Of a stretch of DNA of 64,000 bases, positions 1,175 through 49,986 are shown one piece after another (position 1 is the first letter of the stretch; each line of letters opens with the position of its first letter). The notes beneath the pieces are model-generated. The model was not told the origin of the DNA and did no database searches. It saw only the letters and a program-made list of their open reading frames with translations. Made by a program: the position numbers and the translations under genes. The DNA comes from Setoptus koraiensis (Eukaryota > Animalia > Arthropoda): the NCBI GenBank assembly GCA_048013815.1, contig CM106585.1:18786001-18850000 (forward strand). The letters are read 5' to 3'.

Positions 1175-4006
1175 ATGGAAGTCACAATATTGACCCTCTC
1201 CATGATGATCATAATGTCCACTACTGGACAACTGCTTCCAGTTGACGCTCAACTGAGAAATTTATTTGCTCTGGTGGGAAATCCTTTGGGTCTCCCACTT
1301 GACACGCAAAACGAGCCAAGCAACGATGTTATACTGCAAGATTTGGATGATTTCTTCCATCTGAATCAACTCAACGATCACATGATCAAAGATATAAGAT
1401 TAAAATTTTCTGATCAATCAACTTATCTGGAAGATACTAATTCGGCTGCCACGAATTACATGATAAAAACACTGCACGCCAAGTATAAAATGTCCATTAG
1501 AGGTCTTAGCACTGCCTTCATTAGTTTCTACGATTCGCCCGGAGAAAAAGAGCTCTCCAGCAGTCCAAGAGTGAATCAGACCTTGTGCGGTCAACAATTG
1601 GAATACATGCTATCGTTGGCTGTCCATGGCGACACTCATATATCTATGGGATCTAATTTGAATGTAATGCGCATATTGGATACATTTGGACGACCTGAAG
1701 TGAGTACATTCGAATCGCAATTACTCTGGCTGGGTAACTATCCGCAATGCATGTCGTCACGACTATTGATTCCCATTCAAGATAATAGACATGACAAGCA
1801 ATCAGCAGAAGCGTACGAGAAAGTTGCCATGCATTATTGTTTAGGTCACATCCGGTATCCAGAATGGCCGAATAGCAGCTTCTATTTAAAAAATTTGGCT
1901 ATCAAAACTGGACTGTGTCTACCAGATACGTGTGACTCGTTTAGTTTAGATTATCACAGAGATAAGATAGTTAAGTTAACCCTGACAAATTTCGGCCCGC
2001 GCCACGAAGGTCTCTACATGTCTTCACTGTATTGTTTGCCCCATCACCAGTCAAAGCTACTCGACACGAGCAACGATTTAGTATACCTATCATTTAAGTG
2101 GTTCGTCATTATATGGTCCACGATAGTGTTCGCTTGCACGTTTTACCATTTTTGTTTAATCACGCAAAACAACATGAGAATCAAGGCTGAAAAGAAGCTT
2201 GAGTTGAAATCACAATTGACAAATATGATCCGATCGCAAGTAGCAGACACCAGAGAGTTACAATCTAACAACGGTGGGGCCGCCTCAGAGCGACAATTAG
2301 TGGAGACATTGCGAGCGGACTATTTTAGTTTGCGTATGAAACAGAAGCGCGAAATAAAACGTTTGCGGCGCCTCACAGAACCGGAACGAGTACCAGCAAT
2401 AGTTGCTACATTTTCAATTATCAACAATTGTAGAAAATTATTTGACATTGGAGGCGACGATGATGAGGACGAAATCAAACAAAACGACGGCAACAACAGC
2501 AAACAATCACCTCGAATCGTTATCGTGGACGGTATAAAGGGTATGGCAATCACTATAGTTGTACTTGGCCACTTGGTCATGGGCAAAACACTTGGAACAT
2601 TCACCATCGCCGAGATGAAACAGAGTTTCAACTTGCCATTCAGCGATTACTTTTTCGTGGCTCCCTTCATGATGTTGAACTGTTTCCTTATTGTCACCGG
2701 TTTTCTGACCTCATTTCTAATGTTTAAGCGGGGCAAAAAGTTCATTGAGACACCCATTAATCACGTATTTATAACAGCGCTGAGATATTTGCGTGTTGTG
2801 CCAATATTGTTGTTTGCCGTATGGATGTCAAAGGCAAACTATAGAGTTTCCGGTCACGGCCCCATTTGGGACTATGGAACTGCCAATATATCGCACGGTA
2901 AGATATGTCACGATGAATCATGGTGGCTGTCTGTATTCTTACTAAACAATATGCGCCAAATGAATCTTCAGTGCGTCGGCCAGGCATGGTATTTGGGCAC
3001 CGACTTTCAATTGTTTCTGGTAACACCGCCGTTTTTAATATTGTTGTCGAAAAACCATCGCCTTGGCTACCTGGCCTGCGTGTTGGCCTGTCTAACGGGT
3101 ATACTAGCCTCAATTGTGGCGCTAATGTGGCTTCCCGTTAGCAAGCTCATCTACCTTTACAAGACACCATACAATTTCGCCCTAATTGAAGATGTCCACT
3201 TCTACTACACGACGCCCATAGTCAGATGCGGGCCTTATTTCATGGGCCTCGTGGTTGGTCATCTATTACATCGCATGAGCAGAGGCGAGTTCTCTTTGGA
3301 ATCGGCCGCCAGCGGCCAGAATTGGCTCAAAAGATGGCCAGCAAACACAATTTTGTCCAATGGTACAAATAATGACGATGACAATGATACAAACCGTAAT
3401 TCTGGAATCGCAAACAACGGCGCACAAATTAAACGAAGACTAATTAGCTTTTTCAAGGCGCATTCGGTATTGATTGGTCTCACGGTGACCATATTGACTT
3501 TTGGCAGCGTACCGAGCTACTTGTTCACTGATGTTTTGCGAATCGAGGGTACATGGGACGAACCCATCGTACGTTTATCAATGGCAATTTTCTATAGCGT
3601 GGCCAATTATGCATTTTGTCTATCGATGGCAGTTGCTTTGTTTTTCGCCGGCGCTGGATACGATAAAACCTACTATTTCTCTATATTCAAATTTAAACTT
3701 TGGCGTCCATTAGGGCGCGCCTCATTATCGATTCTGTTGTTTCACTACATAATCCTGATAGCATTCACCTTAAACAATTCAACAAGACTCGAGTCGTCCA
3801 GTATGAAGACTCTATTAACCTATTTGTTTGGCGGAGGTATAGTCTGTATAAGTTGCTGCGTAGCATTGTGTGTCATGTTTGAGTATCCGGTGGTCAACAC
3901 AATCGAATATGTAGTCAAAGCACGCTTTTATCGGCAACGAAGCAGTAATTTAGATGAACACGAAATGAAACTAGAGACACGTTACAATGGTCATCAACAA
4001 TACTAA
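1175..4006 (+). CDS. nrf-6: NRF-6 / OACYL-family multi-pass membrane O-acyltransferase (943 aa, intronless)
   Basis: ATG in aaaATGg context and a hydrophobic leader. N-terminal NRF-like region (ILDTFGRP...WLGNYPQC...YC, GLCLPDTC). Acyltransferase-3 motifs: VDGIKGMAITIVVLGH, FLIVTGFLTS, RYLRVVP, AWYLGTDFQLFLVTP, YTTPIVRCGPYFMG, WRPLGRASLSILLFH, FEYP. Assignment is at family level. Confidence 0.9.
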   Translation: MEVTILTLSMMIIMSTTGQLLPVDAQLRNLFALVGNPLGLPLDTQNEPSNDVILQDLDDFFHLNQLNDHMIKDIRLKFSDQSTYLEDTNSAATNYMIKTLHAKYKMSIRGLSTAFISFYDSPGEKELSSSPRVNQTLCGQQLEYMLSLAVHGDTHISMGSNLNVMRILDTFGRPEVSTFESQLLWLGNYPQCMSSRLLIPIQDNRHDKQSAEAYEKVAMHYCLGHIRYPEWPNSSFYLKNLAIKTGLCLPDTCDSFSLDYHRDKIVKLTLTNFGPRHEGLYMSSLYCLPHHQSKLLDTSNDLVYLSFKWFVIIWSTIVFACTFYHFCLITQNNMRIKAEKKLELKSQLTNMIRSQVADTRELQSNNGGAASERQLVETLRADYFSLRMKQKREIKRLRRLTEPERVPAIVATFSIINNCRKLFDIGGDDDEDEIKQNDGNNSKQSPRIVIVDGIKGMAITIVVLGHLVMGKTLGTFTIAEMKQSFNLPFSDYFFVAPFMMLNCFLIVTGFLTSFLMFKRGKKFIETPINHVFITALRYLRVVPILLFAVWMSKANYRVSGHGPIWDYGTANISHGKICHDESWWLSVFLLNNMRQMNLQCVGQAWYLGTDFQLFLVTPPFLILLSKNHRLGYLACVLACLTGILASIVALMWLPVSKLIYLYKTPYNFALIEDVHFYYTTPIVRCGPYFMGLVVGHLLHRMSRGEFSLESAASGQNWLKRWPANTILSNGTNNDDDNDTNRNSGIANNGAQIKRRLISFFKAHSVLIGLTVTILTFGSVPSYLFTDVLRIEGTWDEPIVRLSMAIFYSVANYAFCLSMAVALFFAGAGYDKTYYFSIFKFKLWRPLGRASLSILLFHYIILIAFTLNNSTRLESSSMKTLLTYLFGGGIVCISCCVALCVMFEYPVVNTIEYVVKARFYRQRSSNLDEHEMKLETRYNGHQQY

Positions 4007-4103: not shown

Positions 4104-5012
4104 TTAGCTTCCTGGAAGGTTGGCCATCCTTTGGGCCAAATGGATGTCCTTGACAAATAATGTGACTCTACCTGCATGTATCGTTGCATAGTTGGCATTT
4201 TCGTATAAGTTGGTCAGGAAGGATTCAGCCGAGCGTTGCATGGCAATCAAGGCAGCATTTTGGAATTTAATTTCCGCTTTCATGGCCCGACCAACCTCTC
4301 TGACATATCTTATGAATACGGCTCTCGGTATGCAAAAATTTGTATCATCCTCATAGCGTTTTATATCTCTCATCAAACGAAGATTACTGGCCGCCACTCT
4401 GGCTCTAATCATGGACACATTGGCACGGCTCTCTAGCTCGTTGTTGTTTGCATCAACTGATGGTCCCGGTGCCACTCCTCTTCTTGGTGTAGTCTTTCGA
4501 CGACTGCCTGATTGTTGCGCCGGTTGTGTCACCGGTTCTAGCGTGAGTTCTTGCGAGGATTCTTGCGTTGATTCTTGCGTTGATTCTTGCGTTGATTCTT
4601 GCGTGGACTCTTGCGTGGATTCTTGCGTGGATTCTTGCGAGGATTCTTGCGTGGGTTGTGTCGTCGGTTGTTGCGTCGATTGTATCGTCGGTTGTTGCGT
4701 CAATTGTATCGTCGGTTGTTGCGTCGATTGTATCGTCGGTTGTAGGTTTGTTTGTGGGCCCAGCACGAGTCTAACCCGACCTCCTTTGCCTCTGCCCATT
4801 CCTACTTTACCCCTGCCTATTCCTACTTTACCCCTGCCTAGCCCTACTGCACGGCTCGAGGAGGTCTGGTTGGAGACGTCCCCATTATTAATCACCCGGC
4901 GAATCTCTTCAATTTTCTTGTCTACGGCGTCCTCAATTGATGCCGTGCTCTTGCGTGCCGTCTGTGTATTCCTGCGTTTCCTCCGGTTCACTATGTTATT
5001 ATTTTCATCCAT
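4104..5012 (-). CDS. CENPA: Divergent histone H3 variant, probably centromeric CenH3/CENP-A-like (302 aa from first ATG, intronless)
   Basis: C-terminal H3 fold: RDIKRYEDDTNFCIPRAVFIRYVREV...KFQNAALIAMQRSAESFLTNLYENANYATIHAGRVTLFVKDIHLAQRM. H3 Q68 is replaced by I and T107 by A, and HAGRVTLF matches human CENP-A. The N-tail is long and non-canonical. The ORF track starts at TTG 5018; the first ATG is at 5012. H3-family membership is near certain; CenH3 identity is less so. Confidence 0.7.
   Translation of the reverse strand: MDENNNIVNRRKRRNTQTARKSTASIEDAVDKKIEEIRRVINNGDVSNQTSSSRAVGLGRGKVGIGRGKVGMGRGKGGRVRLVLGPQTNLQPTIQSTQQPTIQLTQQPTIQSTQQPTTQPTQESSQESTQESTQESTQESTQESTQESTQESSQELTLEPVTQPAQQSGSRRKTTPRRGVAPGPSVDANNNELESRANVSMIRARVAASNLRLMRDIKRYEDDTNFCIPRAVFIRYVREVGRAMKAEIKFQNAALIAMQRSAESFLTNLYENANYATIHAGRVTLFVKDIHLAQRMANLPGS
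4549..4745 (-). repeat. Coding tandem repeats in the H3-variant tail: 12-bp unit (TQES, about 8 copies) and 24-bp unit (QSTQQPTI-like, about 4 copies)
   Basis: Plus strand reads gattcttgcgt(t/g) repeatedly, then gattgtatcgtcggttgttgcgtc repeatedly. Confidence 0.95.
4778..4845 (-). repeat. 21-bp coding repeat encoding GRGKVG(I/M) units ending in GRGKGG
   Basis: cctactttacccctgccta(tt) occurs twice, plus a diverged third copy; translation is GLGRGKVGIGRGKVGMGRGKGGR. Confidence 0.9.
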
Positions 5013-5458
5013 CGTCAACTATTGATGATAAAGTAAGTATAAATTTTACTAAGTAAATTGTGGCCGCTATAGGAATTTCATTTAAATTGGTGGCTCTAGA
5101 ATGCACGAATGTTGTCGGGTGCAACTCCTTCAGTCAGCAATTTCAACGAACAGATAATTGCAATCTTGGCGATTACGCCCCCTTGCGCGTACTTTTTGAT
5201 TGCTGCGTCTCTTTGGGGGGAGCAGCACAGTTTTTCCCGCCAGAGAAACTTATCACGCCAAGTTGAAACGTTGTCATTGCCTGAAGACTAACCCATTTGT
5301 AGTTGCGGTTGCTACCGCAAGAGCGAGCGCGCAACATATGATTTGTATTTTTGTTATTCCACTTGGCGAAACAACGTGGTGCTTTCGGCGTGCATGAACA
5401 TCCATTTTATTATTCTTTCATTTACAAATATGTATCGGGACAAACCAAATGCAACGAC
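5013..5458. promoter_or_regulatory. Putative bidirectional promoter (H3 variant / OGG1) with an E2F-type site
   Basis: 446 bp between divergent ATGs; TTTCCCGC at 5233-5240 fits the E2F consensus TTTSSCGC. Confidence 0.5.
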
Positions 5459-6715
5459 ATGAGAAGAACACGAATCAAAACTTGCCAGCCACCGAAGGAG
5501 ACGAGAGAGACCAGCAAAAGAGTCAACAGCGACGATGTTCACAATATTAAGCGAATCAAGGGGCAATCATCTCAACATGATCAGACCGATTTCAACATCA
5601 GAGAGGGATTTCTGCAAGTCAGCGAAGACGACCTGAATCTAGACAGAACTCTTCTTGGAGGACAATCTTTTCGATGGCGCAAGCAGCCAACAGTTAAAAG
5701 TTGCAACTCAAACACTTGTTATACTGGACCTATTGGCAATAGTGTATATAGACTTTGGCGAGAAACACCGGACAAGGTCGCTTTTAAATGTTATCAGCCG
5801 CTCAGCAATCTCGACAAAGACAAAGCGGATCCCGCAGCGGTGCTTCGTGATTATCTCAGATTGGATTATGATCTTTCAAATTTATACAAACACTGGTCGG
5901 ACAAGGATGAAAATTTCTCCAGGCGCGCAACCAGCTACAGCGGATTTCGGATACTAAGACAAGATCCAGTTGAGAACGTATTTAGTTTCATATGTGCCAC
6001 AAACAATAACATTAAACGTATTAGTGGAATGGTCGAGAGTATGTGTGAACGGTTTGGCAACTATCTCATGACCATAAGCAGTGGTGGAGACATTCCGGAT
6101 GACAAGAGATCCTCTGTGAAAGATGATAAGAGCACTGTCACTAATTCTAGCCAGCAGTCGGCCTATGATCTCAGGATGCAAAACGAAGAAAAATACTATT
6201 CTTTTCCCACCGTAACACGATTAGCCGAGGAGGATGTACACGATTGTTTAAGACACGAGCTAGGCTTCGGATACAGAGCAAAATTTATAGCAAAATCTGC
6301 CCAGCTCCTATTAACTCTAAGCGATAGCACTGGCTATTCCGATCCACGAGATTACTTGCTTTCCTTACGCAAAAAAGCCTACAATGAGTCATGTTCAGAG
6401 CTACAAAAGCTGCCTGGCATTGGAAGAAAAGTCGCCGATTGTATATGTCTTATGTCTATGGATCATTTAGGTTCGGTACCTACAGATTGTCACATCTACG
6501 AAATAGTTTGTCGAGACTACATGCAAAACCTGAAAAAAGAACGCAAATCTCTAACCGAATCTGTGCATAATCTCATTGGAGATTACTTTCGCGATCTACA
6601 TGGTCCTTTGGCTGGATGGTCAACGAGTGTTCTGTTTATTGCCGAGCTCAAGCATTTGCAAGAAGACAAAGATCTTAAAAAGACAAAAGTGAAAAAAGAA
6701 TCCAAGAAGAGCTGA
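5459..6715 (+). CDS. OGG1: 8-oxoguanine DNA glycosylase / AP lyase (418 aa from first ATG, intronless)
   Basis: LNLDRTLLGGQSFRW; GFRILRQDPVENVFSFICATNNNIKRISGMVE; LGFGYRAKFI; HhH-GPD motif LPGIGRKVADCICLM...VPTDCH with the catalytic Lys and Asp kept; GPLAGW...LF. The track's 5351 start is TTG; the first ATG is at 5459. Confidence 0.95.
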   Translation: MRRTRIKTCQPPKETRETSKRVNSDDVHNIKRIKGQSSQHDQTDFNIREGFLQVSEDDLNLDRTLLGGQSFRWRKQPTVKSCNSNTCYTGPIGNSVYRLWRETPDKVAFKCYQPLSNLDKDKADPAAVLRDYLRLDYDLSNLYKHWSDKDENFSRRATSYSGFRILRQDPVENVFSFICATNNNIKRISGMVESMCERFGNYLMTISSGGDIPDDKRSSVKDDKSTVTNSSQQSAYDLRMQNEEKYYSFPTVTRLAEEDVHDCLRHELGFGYRAKFIAKSAQLLLTLSDSTGYSDPRDYLLSLRKKAYNESCSELQKLPGIGRKVADCICLMSMDHLGSVPTDCHIYEIVCRDYMQNLKKERKSLTESVHNLIGDYFRDLHGPLAGWSTSVLFIAELKHLQEDKDLKKTKVKKESKKS

Positions 6716-17622: not shown

Positions 17623-19594
17623 CTAATCTTCTCTGTGAAATTGATTCATATGTGTCGTTATATGAATATTAACATCAGCTGCTCGCACTAGATATGGATA
17701 ATCTCCGCCTGATTTCAGAAGGGCAACCTTGGCATTTGGATACAGCTTGTGCAGTCCCAAATGTATTGTATTGTTGAGATCATAGCGTTCAAAGAGTTCA
17801 ATTATGGTCAAGAAAATATTTGATGGCATATGTGTTGGATTGACATAGTCCGATGTGTAGTTCAGAGTTAGTCTTGATGCCAATTCTGATTGACTCATAC
17901 CTTTCAGGCGATCTGACATGAAAGACATTGCCCTCAGTTCATCACGGCTGGCTGTAGAATTCATCACATGTCTGCTCATTGTTCCTGTTTGATGGTTTGA
18001 GTTTCTATTCTTAATTGTTACAGATGACTGTTGATTGGGGAGATCATGAGAATTGTTACTTGGTAGAGCAGTCGACATAAGTGCCAATTTCGGCATCATC
18101 CAGAAAAACGATGCAGCTCCGCTTCTCTTGAAAACGTTTGTATCTATCCAAGTTGAGTACAATATAATTGACAGAACTCTGTTTCTACCATGTAAACTGG
18201 AAGCAAATTTTTGTGCTAGAAACCCACCCAAGCCCGAACCAAATAAATGAGCCCTTTTGATATTTAGAGAGTCCAAAAAGGTTCTAAAACCAAAGTTGAA
18301 GTTCGCAATGGACCAATAATCTGGCCAAAATACTGAAATGCATCTATAAGACTTTGAAAGTTCCAAAATTTGCTTGTAGAACACGTCCGCCGTCTCTGTG
18401 GCCCCTGGCAAAAATATTAATACTGGCGGATCTGATGAAGTAAGGCTTCCTTCCACAAAAGAGTTCTCCTCAGAACTCTGTGATAATTCTTTTCTTTTTT
18501 CCTCTGGTCTGTTTTTGAATTCTTCGTCATTGTTTGGGTTTTGTTGCGCTTCAAACTTTTGATGATTCTTGCGACTATCATAAGTTTTGGTCAATTTAAA
18601 TTCTTGTTTTATCACATCAGTTGCTTTTGGTGTAGATTCCGAATTATTATCCGTCATTGTCATTGTGTTACCTGATCGGTCTTCTTTAATTTGAGCGTTT
18701 AATTGGCTTGCTGCGGAGTCTTTATTGTTGCTACTAATGACGGATTTATTGGTCGATTCCTGTGTTTCCTCTTTAGCAGAGGAGACGCTTTGTTTCTTGT
18801 TAAACTTAATGGGTATACCAGAATCATAATAAAGCCAGCATTGATTCTCGTCCGAGAAGAGACGTTTCAATGGGACTCGACCTCTAAAAGTGGAATAAAG
18901 ATCATCCGGATCCAGCTCGTCCAGAGGAACTGTATAGTTCAGGATATCCGTTTCGTTGCTGAATGGTTCAAAATGTCTCAAACAGTCAATACTGTAAATG
19001 TGCGAATCATGGTGTTCAGGTAAAGTGGGCAATCGAGGCAACGTAATGAAATTGTGTATAGTAGATCGTCGATAATGTTTGGCAGCAGAATTGTTTTTTT
19101 GTGGCGAGTAATCGTTGTAGTTGTTGACGTTTGTTGATCGGTTAGGCAATTGATTTGTGGTCCAAGCACGGGATCGACGGTGTCGAGTTAATTGATTAGG
19201 AGAAGAGAGGAGCATACTTTTGTTATTATTATTGGTCATCTTAGAGTCATTCATAGTTTTCTCAATATTGATATCCCCACTGCGACCTCGATCATGTGCA
19301 GTCAGAAGGGAGGGAGCTGATGATCTGATAAATTCAGAATCACAAACAAACGATGATCTAGAGAAGAACATGGCAATTGGAAGGGTTTGGGGGGGGGGTC
19401 TGTAGCTAGTGTGAGGCAGCTTTTGAATAGCCAGTTCAAAATTAATATTGTTGTATCATTCGCTGAATGAGTTTTATTAGTTTAGATTGGGCTTGAGAAT
19501 TTATCTGTGTCAAGTGAAATAAGAATGGCACGACTGGCATAGACATAGTGAAAGAATGAGCCACTTACCCTTGACTTTCTTCGATGCAGGCCAT
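17623..19594 (-). CDS. SPG21: Maspardin (alpha/beta-hydrolase fold); probably 2 exons, 600 aa (582 aa if started at 19371)
   Basis: FRGRVPLKR, LIFLPG...TADVFYKQIL, HLFGSGLGGFLAQKFA, FWMMP, QSELASRLTLN and KLYPNAKVALLKSGGDYPYL all match maspardin. A micro-exon at 19594-19569 (MACIEESQG; GG|GTAAGT) splices in frame to CTACAG|A at 19399, and there is an in-frame stop upstream of its ATG. Confidence 0.9.
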
Positions 19595-25000: not shown

Positions 25001-25542
25001 AAGAATGCCCGCGCTCTCAAACCACCATAATAACAATCAAACAAGATTCTAATAATGATGCGGCGCGACATGTTAATCGGACGAAATGTCTGCGCGACCT
25101 GCGAACGCCCGAAGTGTCATCCGCTCAAAGTCCGGCCGCGTCCATTTATATTTATGTATTCCATTTATCTATTTGTGTACGTGTGTTTTTTTTTCTGGCT
25201 GCTGCTATTTTCGGTAATCGCCCCCCGTACGACCGACAGTGCGTTCGCGGACAAGGTGACACAAACATGCACACGGGGCTCGCCGAAGCGTAAATCGATA
25301 ATTTGTTCGAGTGCTGTCGCCCAGCTAAATATACATCTCAAGTAGTTGATCACAGTTGTGTTGTCGCGAACGCATATGTCGGACACTTATGCCGACCTTG
25401 TTCGCGAACATTTTTTAATGCACAAACGCGCCTCAACTTGACGCGACACAATCGCTTGGGTTGTTTTTGGCACCGCGGAAAGTGTTGTTGTGCATGATTG
25501 TTCGCTGTCGAAGCGGAAACTTCATTTCGGGCGGTTTTTTGT

Positions 25543-25625
25543 GCGGTTTCGGGCGGTTTCGGGCAGTTTCGGGCGGTTTCGGGCAGTTTCGGGCCATTTT
25601 GGGTAACTTCGGGCAACTTCGGGCG
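25543..25625 (+). repeat. 10-bp minisatellite (TTTCGGGCRG-like), G-quadruplex-competent
   Basis: Eight GGG runs spaced by 7-nt loops (25551-25623). Confidence 0.9.
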
Positions 25626-25672
25626 AGCAGCGTTTGGGGGTTGCGCGTAACGAGCAAGTTTTATTTTATCCG

Positions 25673-47951: not shown

Positions 47952-49427
47952 CTCGATCTCCAGCTTTCAGCATCTTTTATTAGTATCATGCGACTATTAA
48001 TTGGCGCTATTAGTTGTCACATCGGTCGGCGAAATAGTTTTTCCGGCTCGCCCACGCACACTTGTGCATTGCGCTTGTATATTGCACTTGTCCATTGCAC
48101 TTATGTATAAAACTGACCATTGAGCCGGACTGTTGCGGCTTCTGTAAGCTCGGATGCCATTCAATTCAAATTAGCAATTCAACAACTTCCAAATGAGTAG
48201 ACAACTTGGCAAGTTTTCTGTCCATTTCAAGTTCTCAAAAACACAGTATTGCAAGCAATGGCGACGGGCAGCGTGAGACGGGTTGAAAAAGTGACGGCCA
48301 AGAAAAGTTTAAAGTCATTGTGCAGCGTGCTTTATCGCATTCGGGCGATTACTGCCAACAGCAACAACCACGACGCCAGAGAACAATCAAGGCCGATTAA
48401 AACGTTTAATTTAATCTAGTTATCATTGTTCTAATATTTCATTGTTGCAGCCACATATTGAAGCGACCGGCCAACGCGATAACGAGAAAAAATCCGCCGA
48501 TTTCTTTGACTTTTCTAAGAAAAGTTTTCTTGCCATTTTGCACTTGTTAACGGGCCAGCCGAAATATGTGCGACTTTATAAAGCGACTGGACAGTCGACT
48601 GGACTTTTCGTCGCGGCCAGCAACTTATCCTACGAAACAAACTTTTCGCAACAAGAAGAAGCGTCTAGATTAAATACATAATCATTAATATACAATCATT
48701 AATCTGTGCGAGACTTGGCGCAGCAGCAACGTGAACTAAATGGAACCGGCGCCCAGTTGGTGGTGCTGTTGTTTAATTTAGCTCGCTTATGTTGATCAAC
48801 ATCGAAATGACGTTGATGAACTTGAAGCACTTCATCAGCGCCAACATTGCGTAACCTCTAAAGTTTATACTGGCCAAACTGACGCGCTGGCCAATTCCTT
48901 CTTGGCTGGCCGGCGCTGATTTTCTCAAAATCTCAGTTTGTTGGCAGTTTGTTGTGGCCCAGCACTTGCCCACGGTAACCATAACCCACCCCGAGCTTGC
49001 CCGAAAGTATTGCGAAAGTTTTCTCATGCTCAACAAGCTCTCATGATAATAACAACAACAACAATAATAATGATAAGCTGACATAAGATGTAATTGTGTG
49101 ATGCAAGCAATGTGATTAATCGGGCGCACAATGGCCATAGCTCACGCTGGGCTACCTCAGGGCCATTGTTGGCGTGCCCCGGCTGCTCGTCTCGCCTGCG
49201 TCCATGTCCGCCGCCGTTCGGGCCGGGCCGGCCGAATGCGGCCAGCGCACGCCGATGACGCAAGTCGCATTCGGTTCGTGCCGGACATTTGCGCAACTGT
49301 CTAGTTGGCCCGTCTAGACAGGCGAGTGCGACCGCGACTAAACGAGCACGCCGAGCGAGAACGCTCGGGTAATCGCTCGGACGTTGTGCGTTGGCCAGCA
49401 GTTCGACCCGAGCTGTTCGAGCGGCAT

Positions 49428-49510
49428 CCGGGCAATTTCGGGCGATTTCGGGCGATTTCGGGCAGTTTCGGGCAATTTCGGACAATTTCGGACAATTTCG
49501 GGCGATTTTC
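49428..49510 (+). repeat. 10-bp minisatellite (TTTCGGGCRA-like), G-quadruplex-competent
   Basis: Five GGG runs with 7-nt loops (49430-49472), then degenerate copies. Confidence 0.9.
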
Positions 49511-49986
49511 AGATATTTTTTGGGCGATTTCGCGCGATTTTCAGATATTTTTCGGCCGATTTTCTGATAATTTTCGGGCGAGTTTGGGACGATTGGCGCT
49601 GATTTCCGAGCCGTCCTCAGACGATTTTCGGGCGACCTGCGCGGATTTCGGGCCGTCGGCGCCACCAGCAAACAGAGGATCATTTTTCATTATTCATCAC
49701 CCGTTCGGCCGCTCACGAGCGCGTCCACTAATAACGCCAATAGCTCGGGTCAGCCAGTTGTCAGGCGCGCAGCGATAAATGTTTGCCCATCGGTTATTGA
49801 TGATCTGGCCAAAGGAGCACGAACGAATTACCTGGGCCACTCACGCTCACTGGGGGCGCCACCGACGGGAGCACCTAATCAGGCGCGATCGTCCATCATG
49901 AGCGTGCACTGCGCAACCGGCCCGCATTCGGACTTGCCATTCAGACTTGCCATTCGGACTCGGCCGGCTAGCTCGCCAGCGAGCCA

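What the first reader, a model, noticed from the sequence alone, without database searches (positions are those of the whole stretch)
4104..5012. Histone H3 variant with a mosaic tail: H3K9/S10 motif plus three H2A/H4-like GRGK motifs
Seen: the roughly 200-aa N-tail contains QTARKST (4964-4944), identical to H3 residues 5-11. K9/S10 are kept, but the K4 position is Thr and the motif is no longer at the N-terminus. It is followed by GRGKVG-I-GRGKVG-M-GRGKGG; GRGKGG equals H4 residues 2-7 and GRGK also starts H2A. Just before the fold lies RRKTT...RGVAPGP, a possible K27-to-RPG remnant. Known: CenH3 tails usually lose H3 tail motifs; ARKS is the Su(var)3-9/HP1 and Aurora B site; H4R3/H2AR3 GRG sites are PRMT1/PRMT5 targets. 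Inference: one tail may display H3-type and H4/H2A-type mark sites together, as a centromeric or novel chromatin variant or a mark decoy. I do not know of a described example.
Basis: partly seen in the sequence, partly recalled or inferred. Interest (0 to 1): 0.75.

Follow-up and report, generated by a model that had tools for sequence, protein, structure and literature searches.

The report
Mite centromeric-type H3 with conserved tail motifs
This intronless gene of a gall-mite (eriophyoid) genome encodes a fast-evolving, most likely centromeric, histone H3 variant whose long disordered tail has kept the H3 lysine-9/serine-10 peptide and a short H4-like GRGKGG site under selection; this is an interesting detail of a known protein class, not a new class.

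Summary
ORF 4104-5012 (minus strand) encodes 302 aa. It has a C-terminal H3-type histone fold and a tail of about 200 aa. The tail carries QTARKST (H3 residues 5-11), three GRGK units and RRKTTPRRGVAPGP.

An orthologue in a related mite (P0001) is only 43% identical overall. It still keeps TQTARKST, one AVGLGRGKGG.VR block and RRKxTPRR, although synonymous sites are saturated. These peptides are therefore under selection. A likely orthologue in Fragariocoptes setiger keeps QVARKST, but not GRGKGG.

The "three" GRGK motifs are one conserved site plus a recent 21-bp tandem expansion. The expansion is polymorphic, with 2 or 3 units.

The fold is 38-47% identical to H3 and under strong purifying selection (dN/dS 0.08). 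Q68 and T107 are replaced. Its α2-α3 half scores better against human CENP-A than against any wild-type H3. However, loop 1 is not extended and F84 is kept.

My best reading is the eriophyoid CenH3 (confidence about 0.65). QTARKST is an ancestral H3-tail remnant, not a mosaic by recombination. The H4 likeness is a 6-mer that fits the HAT1 consensus GxGKxG. No RNA, localisation or modification data could be obtained.

This scan has not reported this gene before. It has noted a CENP-C gene and another QT(A/V)RKST-bearing ORF elsewhere in the same genome.

The parts
4104..5012 (-). Complete intronless CDS (302 aa plus stop) of the H3 variant
   Evidence: The N-terminus M(I)DENNN is shared with orthologue P0001. 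Fold dN/dS is 0.08.
4971..4985 (-). Basic cluster RRKRR (KKKKK in the orthologue), NLS-like, directly before the H3-like peptide
   Evidence: The NLS role is an inference.
4944..4964 (-). QTARKST, identical to H3 residues 5-11 (K9/S10 cassette)
   Evidence: It is invariant in P0001 with synonymous codon differences. F. setiger P0023 has QVARKST.
4881..4937 (-). Conserved tail block (residues 26-44) predicted as the only helix of the tail
   Evidence: AF2 predicts a helix at 29-42 with pLDDT about 88. The pattern D.VD..IE..R..IN.G is shared with P0001.
4779..4838 (-). GRGKVG-I-GRGKVG-M-GRGKGG. The third unit is the conserved site. Units 1-2 are a recent 21-bp tandem duplication.
   Evidence: TRF finds period 21 with 3.3 copies. 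Codons are listed. P0001 has a single copy. Run X7 has a 21-bp in-frame deletion. All units fit the HAT1 consensus GxGKxG (PMC10092946).
4650..4742 (-). QPTIQSTQ coding repeat (24-bp period), not conserved
4548..4649 (-). QEST coding repeat (12-bp period, about 10 copies), not conserved
   Evidence: Short-read contigs break here.
4461..4502 (-). RRKTTPRRGVAPGP. The RRKxTPRR core is conserved. It is a possible H3 K27-region remnant and contains a minimal CDK-type TPxR site.
   Evidence: P0001 has RRKNTPRR. F. setiger has the intermediate KALKST..PAT..RLRPG. Both the remnant reading and the kinase reading are inferences.
4107..4442 (-). Histone fold: long αN (residues 191-223), α1 (230-244), α2 (252-279), α3 (287-297) and a short C-tail ending LPGS
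   Evidence: Pfam and PDB searches and the AF2 model.
5013..5350 (.). 338-bp intergenic region shared with the divergently oriented OGG1 gene (5351-6715, plus strand); presumed bidirectional promoter
   Evidence: The promoter role is an inference.

Best explanation
The gene most likely encodes the CenH3 (CENP-A-type) histone of an eriophyoid mite, a lineage reported to have holocentric chromosomes.

Shown by the sequence and the comparisons:
- The C-terminal fold is a divergent but strongly constrained H3 fold.
- The tail of about 200 aa is intrinsically disordered and evolves fast through coding-repeat expansion.
- The tail carries four short islands under purifying selection. They are (i) a basic cluster plus TQTARKST, (ii) a short helix, (iii) AVGLGRGKGG.VR and (iv) RRKxTPRR.

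Inferred origin of the islands:
- Island (i), and probably island (iv), are remnants of the ancestral H3 tail (K9/S10 and K27 regions) pushed apart by insertions.
- Island (iii) lies in inserted sequence. It resembles H4 by function or convergence, and shared descent is not needed to explain it.

Inferred mechanism:
- The ARKS cassette serves as a mitotic Aurora-B-type phospho-site, and possibly as a K9 methyl/HP1 site, on centromeric nucleosomes. This would be analogous to Aurora B phosphorylation of human CENP-A Ser7.
- The GxGKxG site is an acetylation (HAT1/RbAp46/48-type) or arginine-methylation site used during pre-deposition handling.
For: Histone fold and CenH3-type features:
- The H3 fold is confirmed. 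It is 47% identical to H3.3 over α1-α3 and 38% over the wider envelope.
- H3 Q68 is replaced by Ile and T107 by Ala (read from the alignment). These are two of the diagnostic residues listed in PMC4359364.
- The α2-α3-C-terminal half scores 49-51 bits against human CENP-A chains and 44-46 bits against every wild-type H3.

Conservation and rate of evolution:
- Orthologue P0001 is 43% identical overall, while a neighbouring gene is 82% identical between the same two genomes.
- dN/dS is 0.08 for the fold, 0.11 for the GRGK block and 0.22 for the N-tail. dS is above 1.4 and saturated. TQTARKST and GRGKGG are invariant with synonymous codon changes.
- F. setiger P0023 keeps ARQVARKST near its N-terminus. 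Holding the three mite proteins together as a clade gave a log-likelihood 4.69 higher than the free search's tree, and the AU test did not reject it (p-AU 0.546).

Chance and uniqueness:
- The motif matches exceed chance.
- No other protein among 1.84 billion cluster representatives matches the tail.

Context and precedents:
- An earlier scan note (s1-349808, not tested here) places a CENP-C gene just upstream of the window.
- Literature precedents are PMC2199334, PMC5097169, PMC8450102, PMC4797270 and PMC10092946.
Against: - Loop 1 is not extended, and F84 is retained. Both are usual CenH3 hallmarks.
- The fold phylogeny is unresolved, and the protein sits on a very long branch.
- F. setiger P0023 looks much more H3-like. 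It keeps Q68, F84 and T107, its fold is 66% identical to H3, and it shares no synteny. Its orthology is therefore only 'not rejected'.
- Several holocentric insect lineages have lost CenH3 (PMC4359364).
- I could not scan the rest of this genome for a better candidate.
- No RNA run was found, and the contigs laid on the region behave like DNA.
- No localisation or modification data exist.
Confidence: 0.65

Rival explanations
1. It is a lineage-specific, non-centromeric H3 variant, for example germline-, sperm- or chromatin-state-specific. Its tail would present H3K9/S10-type and H4-type sites elsewhere in the genome. The real CenH3 would be another gene, or would have been lost in this holocentric lineage.
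For: - Loop 1 is not extended and F84 is kept.
- The tree does not place the protein with any named CenH3.
- The F. setiger relative keeps most H3 hallmarks.
- CenH3 loss accompanies holocentricity in insects (PMC4359364), and eriophyoids are reported to be holocentric (PMC7738191).
Against: - Q68 and T107 are replaced, and the α2-α3 half is more CENP-A-like than H3-like.
- The tail is extremely long and fast-evolving while the fold is constrained. This is the classical CenH3 pattern.
- Earlier notes on this genome name no other H3 variant with an intact fold.
Confidence: 0.27
2. The motif matches are functionless leftovers or low-complexity coincidences. QTARKST would be a not-yet-eroded remnant and GRGKGG a chance Gly/Arg/Lys word. 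The tail would act only as a disordered spacer.
For: - Most of the tail is repeat-driven and unalignable between species.
- GRGKGG is absent from F. setiger.
- GRGK copy number is polymorphic.
- ARK[ST] is retained in 8 of 23 other divergent H3-like proteins.
Against: - Both peptides are invariant between two species whose synonymous sites are saturated, with silent codon differences inside the motifs.
- Shuffles give 0 of 20,000 and 3 of 20,000 matches.
- ARKST persists in the more distant F. setiger protein.
Confidence: 0.06
3. It is a pseudogene or a mis-called ORF. The real gene would be the antisense ORF 4411-5025 (plus strand), or nothing at all.
For: No RNA evidence was obtained. An overlapping 204-aa plus-strand ORF exists.
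Against: - The minus-strand ORF is intact in three species.
- Fold dN/dS is 0.08.
- All repeat periods (12, 21, 24, 36) and the polymorphic indel (21 bp) are multiples of three.
- The antisense ORF is the Cys/Val-rich translation of the repeats read backwards.
Confidence: 0.02

Closest known systems
CenH3 / CENP-A (human CENP-A, Drosophila Cid, C. elegans HCP-3)
   Same: - A divergent H3 fold under purifying selection.
- A long, unalignable, rapidly evolving N-tail with short lineage-specific conserved blocks.
- Q68 and T107 are replaced.
- The HAGRVTLF-type α2/α3 junction scores best against human CENP-A.
- The tail carries an Aurora-type R-K-S site, as human CENP-A carries Ser7 (PMC2199334).
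   Different: - There is no loop-1 extension, and F84 is kept.
- The tail retains an exact H3 5-11 peptide and a GxGKxG site.
- Centromeric localisation is untested.
- The host lineage is reported to be holocentric.
Canonical H3 / H3.3
   Same: - The fold aligns without gaps to H3 47-130.
- The QTARKST peptide is identical to H3 5-11.
   Different: - Fold identity is only 38-47%.
- The H3 tail is otherwise gone: K4 is Thr, there is no free ARTK N-terminus, and the RYRPG motif is lost.
- The tail is about 200 aa instead of about 40.
- The protein evolves quickly between related mites (77% fold identity).
Histone H4 / H2A N-termini (SGRGKGG / SGRGK) as HAT1 and PRMT substrates
   Same: GRGKGG is identical to H4 2-7. 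All three units fit the HAT1 consensus GxGKxG (PMC10092946).
   Different: - Only six residues are shared.
- The motif is internal, not N-terminal, and is not preceded by Ser.
- There is no H4 or H2A fold.
- The motif is absent from the F. setiger relative. Common descent is therefore not shown, and convergence or chance plus selection is more likely.
Other divergent H3-like proteins that keep an ARK[ST] cassette (P0022, P0030, P0036, P0057, P0079, P0131, P0136)
   Same: These are H3-fold variants with modified or extended tails that still carry (Q/K)(T/V)ARK(S/T). In some of them it is internal or repeated.
   Different: Their identities and functions are unknown because the library is unannotated. 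None combines the cassette with GRGKGG. Their folds are 65-78% identical to H3, against 38% here (P0079 was not measured).

Membership tests
CenH3 / CENP-A | H3-type histone fold | tested here: met
   Pfam PF00125 at 2e-18. PDB H3.3 at 6e-20, aligned without gaps. AF2 predicts αN-α1-α2-α3 with pLDDT 82-97.
CenH3 / CENP-A | N-terminal tail highly divergent from H3 in length and sequence | tested here: met
   The tail is about 200 aa, disordered and repeat-rich, and unalignable apart from short islands. The retained QTARKST 7-mer is the exception.
CenH3 / CENP-A | Extended loop 1 relative to H3 (PMC4359364) | tested here: not met
   The region across loop 1 aligns to H3 without gaps (MKAEIKFQ against FKTDLRFQ). 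F. setiger P0023 has one extra residue.
CenH3 / CENP-A | Absence of the H3 Gln, Phe and Thr residues. PMC4359364 gives positions 69, 85 and 118. I map these to H3 Q68, F84 and T107 from memory of Malik & Henikoff 2003. | tested here: inconclusive
   Q68 is Ile and T107 is Ala, so both are absent, but F84 is retained (alignment). P0001 shows the same pattern.
CenH3 / CENP-A | Accelerated evolution compared with canonical H3, with a constrained fold | tested here: met
   Identity to P0001 is 43% overall and 77% in the fold, while the neighbouring gene is 82% identical. Fold dN/dS is 0.08.
CenH3 / CENP-A | Phylogenetic grouping with CenH3s, apart from H3/H3.3 | tested here: inconclusive
   The 129-row fold tree is unresolved and the protein sits on a long branch of 1.23. 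No named chelicerate CenH3 sequences were available. The α2-α3 half prefers human CENP-A by about 5 bits.
CenH3 / CENP-A | Localisation to centromeres or kinetochores, and a requirement for segregation | not testable with these tools
   This needs cytology, CUT&Tag or knock-down.
CenH3 / CENP-A | Being the only or best such variant in the genome | not tested
   Only the 64-kb window can be read. Earlier notes on this genome list no other H3 variant with an intact fold, but they are not a systematic search.
Canonical H3 / H3.3 | Near-invariant sequence (over 90% identity) and the complete ARTKQTARKS...RYRPG tail | tested here: not met
   Fold identity is 38-47%. Only residues 5-11 of the tail are retained.
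H4/H2A-derived tail (true mosaic by descent) | Sequence similarity to H4 or H2A that extends beyond a short motif and is present across the lineage | tested here: not met
   The longest shared word with the H4 tail is 6 residues in this protein and in P0001, and 3 residues in F. setiger.

The most novel reading that the evidence does not exclude
In holocentric gall mites, which lack a pericentromeric heterochromatin block, the CenH3 tail may carry the signals that normally sit on neighbouring H3 and on the partner H4. An HP1/Aurora-B-readable K9/S10 cassette and a HAT1/PRMT-type GxGKxG site would then be built into each centromeric nucleosome. The nucleosome would recruit the chromosomal-passenger/HP1 and deposition machineries on its own.
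Probability: 0.12. Interest if true: 0.75.

Novelty: new member of a known kind. Interest (0 to 1): 0.4.

Why it matters
If it is the CenH3, then eriophyoid mites keep a CenH3/CENP-C-type kinetochore base. These mites have among the smallest arthropod genomes and are reported to be holocentric, whereas several holocentric insect orders lost CenH3.

The tail is also a natural experiment. Nearly everything in it has been replaced by repeats, yet the H3 5-11 peptide and one GxGKxG site have survived. That points to specific enzymes or readers acting on a centromeric histone tail, such as Aurora B, K9 methyltransferase/HP1, HAT1 or PRMT. It also gives short, testable targets for mass spectrometry and mutagenesis.

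This remains a modest advance. Lineage-specific conserved blocks in CenH3 tails are already known, and no function has been shown here.

Tried and rejected
RNA evidence
- One run search and one read-laying run found only DNA-like Logan contigs, with no joints and no transcript ends. Splicing and expression therefore remain untested.

Searches for more orthologues
- The word-index search on the whole protein found only P0001. The same search on the fold region also found only P0001.
- The exhaustive profile search found no other protein that matches the tail.
- P0002-P0004 are low-complexity or unrelated hits.

Synteny
- The P0001 contig's downstream neighbour is the orthologue of window ORF 17623-19371, so the region is rearranged but nearby.
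- The F. setiger locus shares no neighbours with the window.

Fold phylogeny
- The tree is unresolved. Only the query+P0001 pair is supported.

ESM Atlas
- The query itself could not be searched because the machine was busy.
- The search with P0023 did not distinguish H3 from CenH3.

Other checks
- A literature search for CenH3 together with ARKS found no paper holding both terms among those listed.
- Rfam found nothing in the window.
- The overlapping plus-strand ORF 4411-5025 was rejected as an antisense artefact of the repeats.
- A Haspin/Survivin (H3T3ph) or K4-reader role was considered and rejected. The motif is internal, K4 is Thr, and there is no ARTK N-terminus.

Full report
**Observation.**
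The minus-strand ORF has its ATG at 5012 and its TAA stop at 4104-4106, and encodes 302 aa. All the stated motifs are present at the stated coordinates:

| Feature | Residues | Window coordinates |
|---|---|---|
| QTARKST, preceded by Thr at the H3 K4 position | 17-23 | 4964-4944 |
| GRGKVG-I-GRGKVG-M-GRGKGG | 59-78 | 4838-4779 |
| RRKTTPRRGVAPGP | 171-184 | 4502-4461 |

Pfam finds the core-histone domain (PF00125, E 2e-18). The best solved structures are H3.3 and H3.2, and residues 213-296 align without gaps to H3 47-130. I compared the tail with H3 and H4 N-termini taken from tool-returned proteins. The tail shares exactly QTARKST (H3 5-11) and GRGKGG (H4 2-7). In 20,000 composition-preserving shuffles of the tail, a shared word of 7 or more residues with the H3 tail never occurred. 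A shared word of 6 or more with the H4 tail occurred 3 times.

**Genomic setting.**
The gene is intronless. It lies between a convergent NRF/acyltransferase-3 gene (1175-4006) and a divergent OGG1 gene (5351-6715), with 338 bp between the two start codons. Earlier notes of this scan describe the genome as a two-piece eriophyoid (gall-mite) assembly. They also place a CENP-C gene just before the window's start (not tested here). One of my own results fits an eriophyoid origin. One of the few related proteins found comes from Fragariocoptes setiger, an eriophyoid. Eriophyoids, and Acariformes generally, are reported to have holocentric chromosomes (PMC7738191; PMC7392213).

**Anatomy of the tail.**
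Three coding tandem arrays make up much of the tail. All their periods are multiples of three:
- a 21-bp array (the GRGK units, 3.3 copies);
- a 24-bp array (QPTIQSTQ, 4 copies);
- a 12-bp array (QEST, about 10 copies).

AlphaFold2 predicts the tail as disordered except for one short helix at residues 29-42 (pLDDT about 88). After the tail come a long αN (191-223), α1 (230-244), α2 (252-279) and α3 (287-297).

**Relatives.**
The word-index search found one clear orthologue, P0001. It is 288 aa, comes from a Logan assembly, scores E 3e-56, and is 43% identical. Its contig also carries the orthologue of window ORF 17623-19371, which is 82% identical. The histone variant therefore evolves much faster than a neighbouring gene.

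The alignment shows that the repeats are not conserved but that four islands are:
- (K/R)5-x-TQTARKST;
- D.VD..IE..R..IN.G, which is the predicted helix;
- AVGLGRGKGG.VR, present once in P0001;
- RRK(T/N)TPRR.

Nei-Gojobori estimates show saturated synonymous divergence (dS from 1.4 to above 3). dN/dS is 0.08 for the fold, 0.11 for the GRGK block, 0.22 for the N-terminal tail and 0.44 for the variable middle. Codons inside TQTARKST and GRGKGG differ synonymously between the two species. These peptides are therefore maintained by selection.

An exhaustive profile search of 1.84 billion cluster representatives found 9,207 H3-fold proteins. None other than P0001 matched the tail. Among the hits, P0023 is a complete intronless 208-aa ORF of F. 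setiger (KAG9510509.1). Its N-terminus reads MPRPQRNVARQVARKSTTP, and further on it still reads KALKST..PAT..RLRPG, which resembles H3 K23-G44. It has no GRGKGG and shares no synteny with the window.

The fold tree of 129 rows is unresolved. It joins only the query and P0001, with support 100, on a very long branch. Constraining the three mite proteins to one clade gave a log-likelihood 4.69 higher than the free search's tree. The AU test does not reject that clade (p-AU 0.546).

**The 'three GRGK motifs'.**
Units 1 and 2 differ at one base of 21. Unit 3 is the copy that aligns with the single GRGKGG of P0001. Contigs of another public run (X7) lack exactly one 21-bp unit, in frame. There is thus one conserved site plus a recent, copy-number-polymorphic expansion.

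**What it is.**
Several features argue for a CenH3:
- The fold is only 38-47% identical to H3 yet strongly constrained.
- The tail is long, disordered and fast-evolving.
- H3 Q68 is Ile and T107 is Ala. These are diagnostic positions named in PMC4359364; I mapped the numbering from memory of Malik & Henikoff 2003.
- When only α2-α3 and the C-tail are searched, human CENP-A chains score 49-51 bits. Every wild-type H3 scores 44-46 bits.

Other features argue against:
- Loop 1 is not extended, and F84 is kept.
- The phylogeny is uninformative.
- The F. setiger protein keeps Q68, F84 and T107.
- I could not search the rest of the genome.

I put CenH3 at about 0.65. A non-centromeric lineage-specific H3 variant is at about 0.27.

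**Origin of the motifs.**
TQTARKST sits close to the N-terminus in all three mites. In F. setiger it sits at nearly the canonical distance from residue 1, and recognisable K27-to-RPG sequence follows it. The simplest reading is descent from the ancestral H3 tail, with insertions pushing the remnants apart. The insertions are the helix, the GRGK block and the repeats. This is retention and not a mosaic made by recombination.

Such retention is not unique. Among 23 single-domain hits whose folds are at most 72% identical to H3, 8 carry an ARK[ST] in the tail. In some it is internal or repeated.

The H4 likeness is a 6-mer in inserted sequence and is absent from F. setiger. Common descent from H4 or H2A is not supported.

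**How it may work (inference).**
- The conserved Q-T-A-R-K-S-T covers an Aurora-type R-K-S site. Aurora B phosphorylates the human CENP-A tail at Ser7 (PMC2199334).
- From established knowledge, the same residues are those recognised by K9 methyltransferases and by the HP1 chromodomain.
- A Haspin/Survivin or K4-reader role is unlikely, because the peptide is internal and K4 is Thr.
- All GRGK units fit the HAT1 consensus GxGKxG (PMC10092946).
- HAT1-RbAp46/48 acetylation of H4 K5/K12 in the pre-nucleosomal complex is required for CENP-A deposition in vertebrate cells (PMC5097169). HAT-1 is required for de novo holocentromere formation in C. elegans (PMC8450102). Hat1 also associates with Drosophila CID (PMC4797270).
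- RRKxTPRR contains a minimal CDK-type site.
- None of these modifications has been shown for this protein.

**Limits.**
- No run on record as RNA holds the locus, and the contigs laid on it span intergenic DNA.
- Indirect support for translation comes from the conserved start (M(I)DENNN) and from the intact frame in three species.
- Further indirect support comes from the in-frame polymorphism and from repeat periods that are multiples of three.

**Verdict.**
This is a real and well-conserved feature. It is most likely the eriophyoid CenH3, whose tail retains the H3 K9/S10 peptide and carries a conserved GxGKxG site. It is a new member of a known protein class with an unusual but not unprecedented tail. 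Interest is moderate (0.4).

Noticed in passing
window 5018-5019: Contigs of run X5 read TT instead of AC on the plus strand. On the coding strand this turns TTG into ATG two codons upstream of the start, giving MTMDENN.... It is a harmless start-site polymorphism.
   Followed up: partly
window 4798 (21 bp): Run X7 contigs lack one 21-bp GRGKVG unit, in frame. This is a copy-number polymorphism of the coding repeat.
   Followed up: yes
window 22000-64000: The right two-thirds of the window is much more GC-rich than the gene-dense left part (50-60% against about 40-45%). It has few long ORFs, many CAA/CAG-type imperfect microsatellites on both strands, and 10-bp TTTCGGGC(G/A)N arrays at 25520-25646 and 49399-49535. 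There are no Rfam matches. This is odd for a streamlined genome, and its nature was not determined.
   Followed up: partly
window 17623-19371 (-) and L001:1382-3136 (-): In the related species, a 582-aa abhydrolase/maspardin-like gene lies directly downstream of the H3 variant. Here it lies 13 kb away, so the region has undergone a local rearrangement between the two mites.
   Followed up: partly
The two inner-kinetochore partners would then be near neighbours. This may be coincidence.
   Followed up: no
These are the same two spellings found in the CenH3-like tails of this mite (QTARKST) and of F. setiger (QVARKST). It may derive from the H3 or CenH3 tail, or compete for the same readers.
   Followed up: no
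P0030: An unannotated 223-aa H3-like protein from a marine eukaryote data set carries three ARKS-type cassettes in an extended tail (KQTARKSS, ETARKSTGG, QLARKSTAT). This is another natural case of a repeated K9/S10 peptide on an H3 fold.
   Followed up: no
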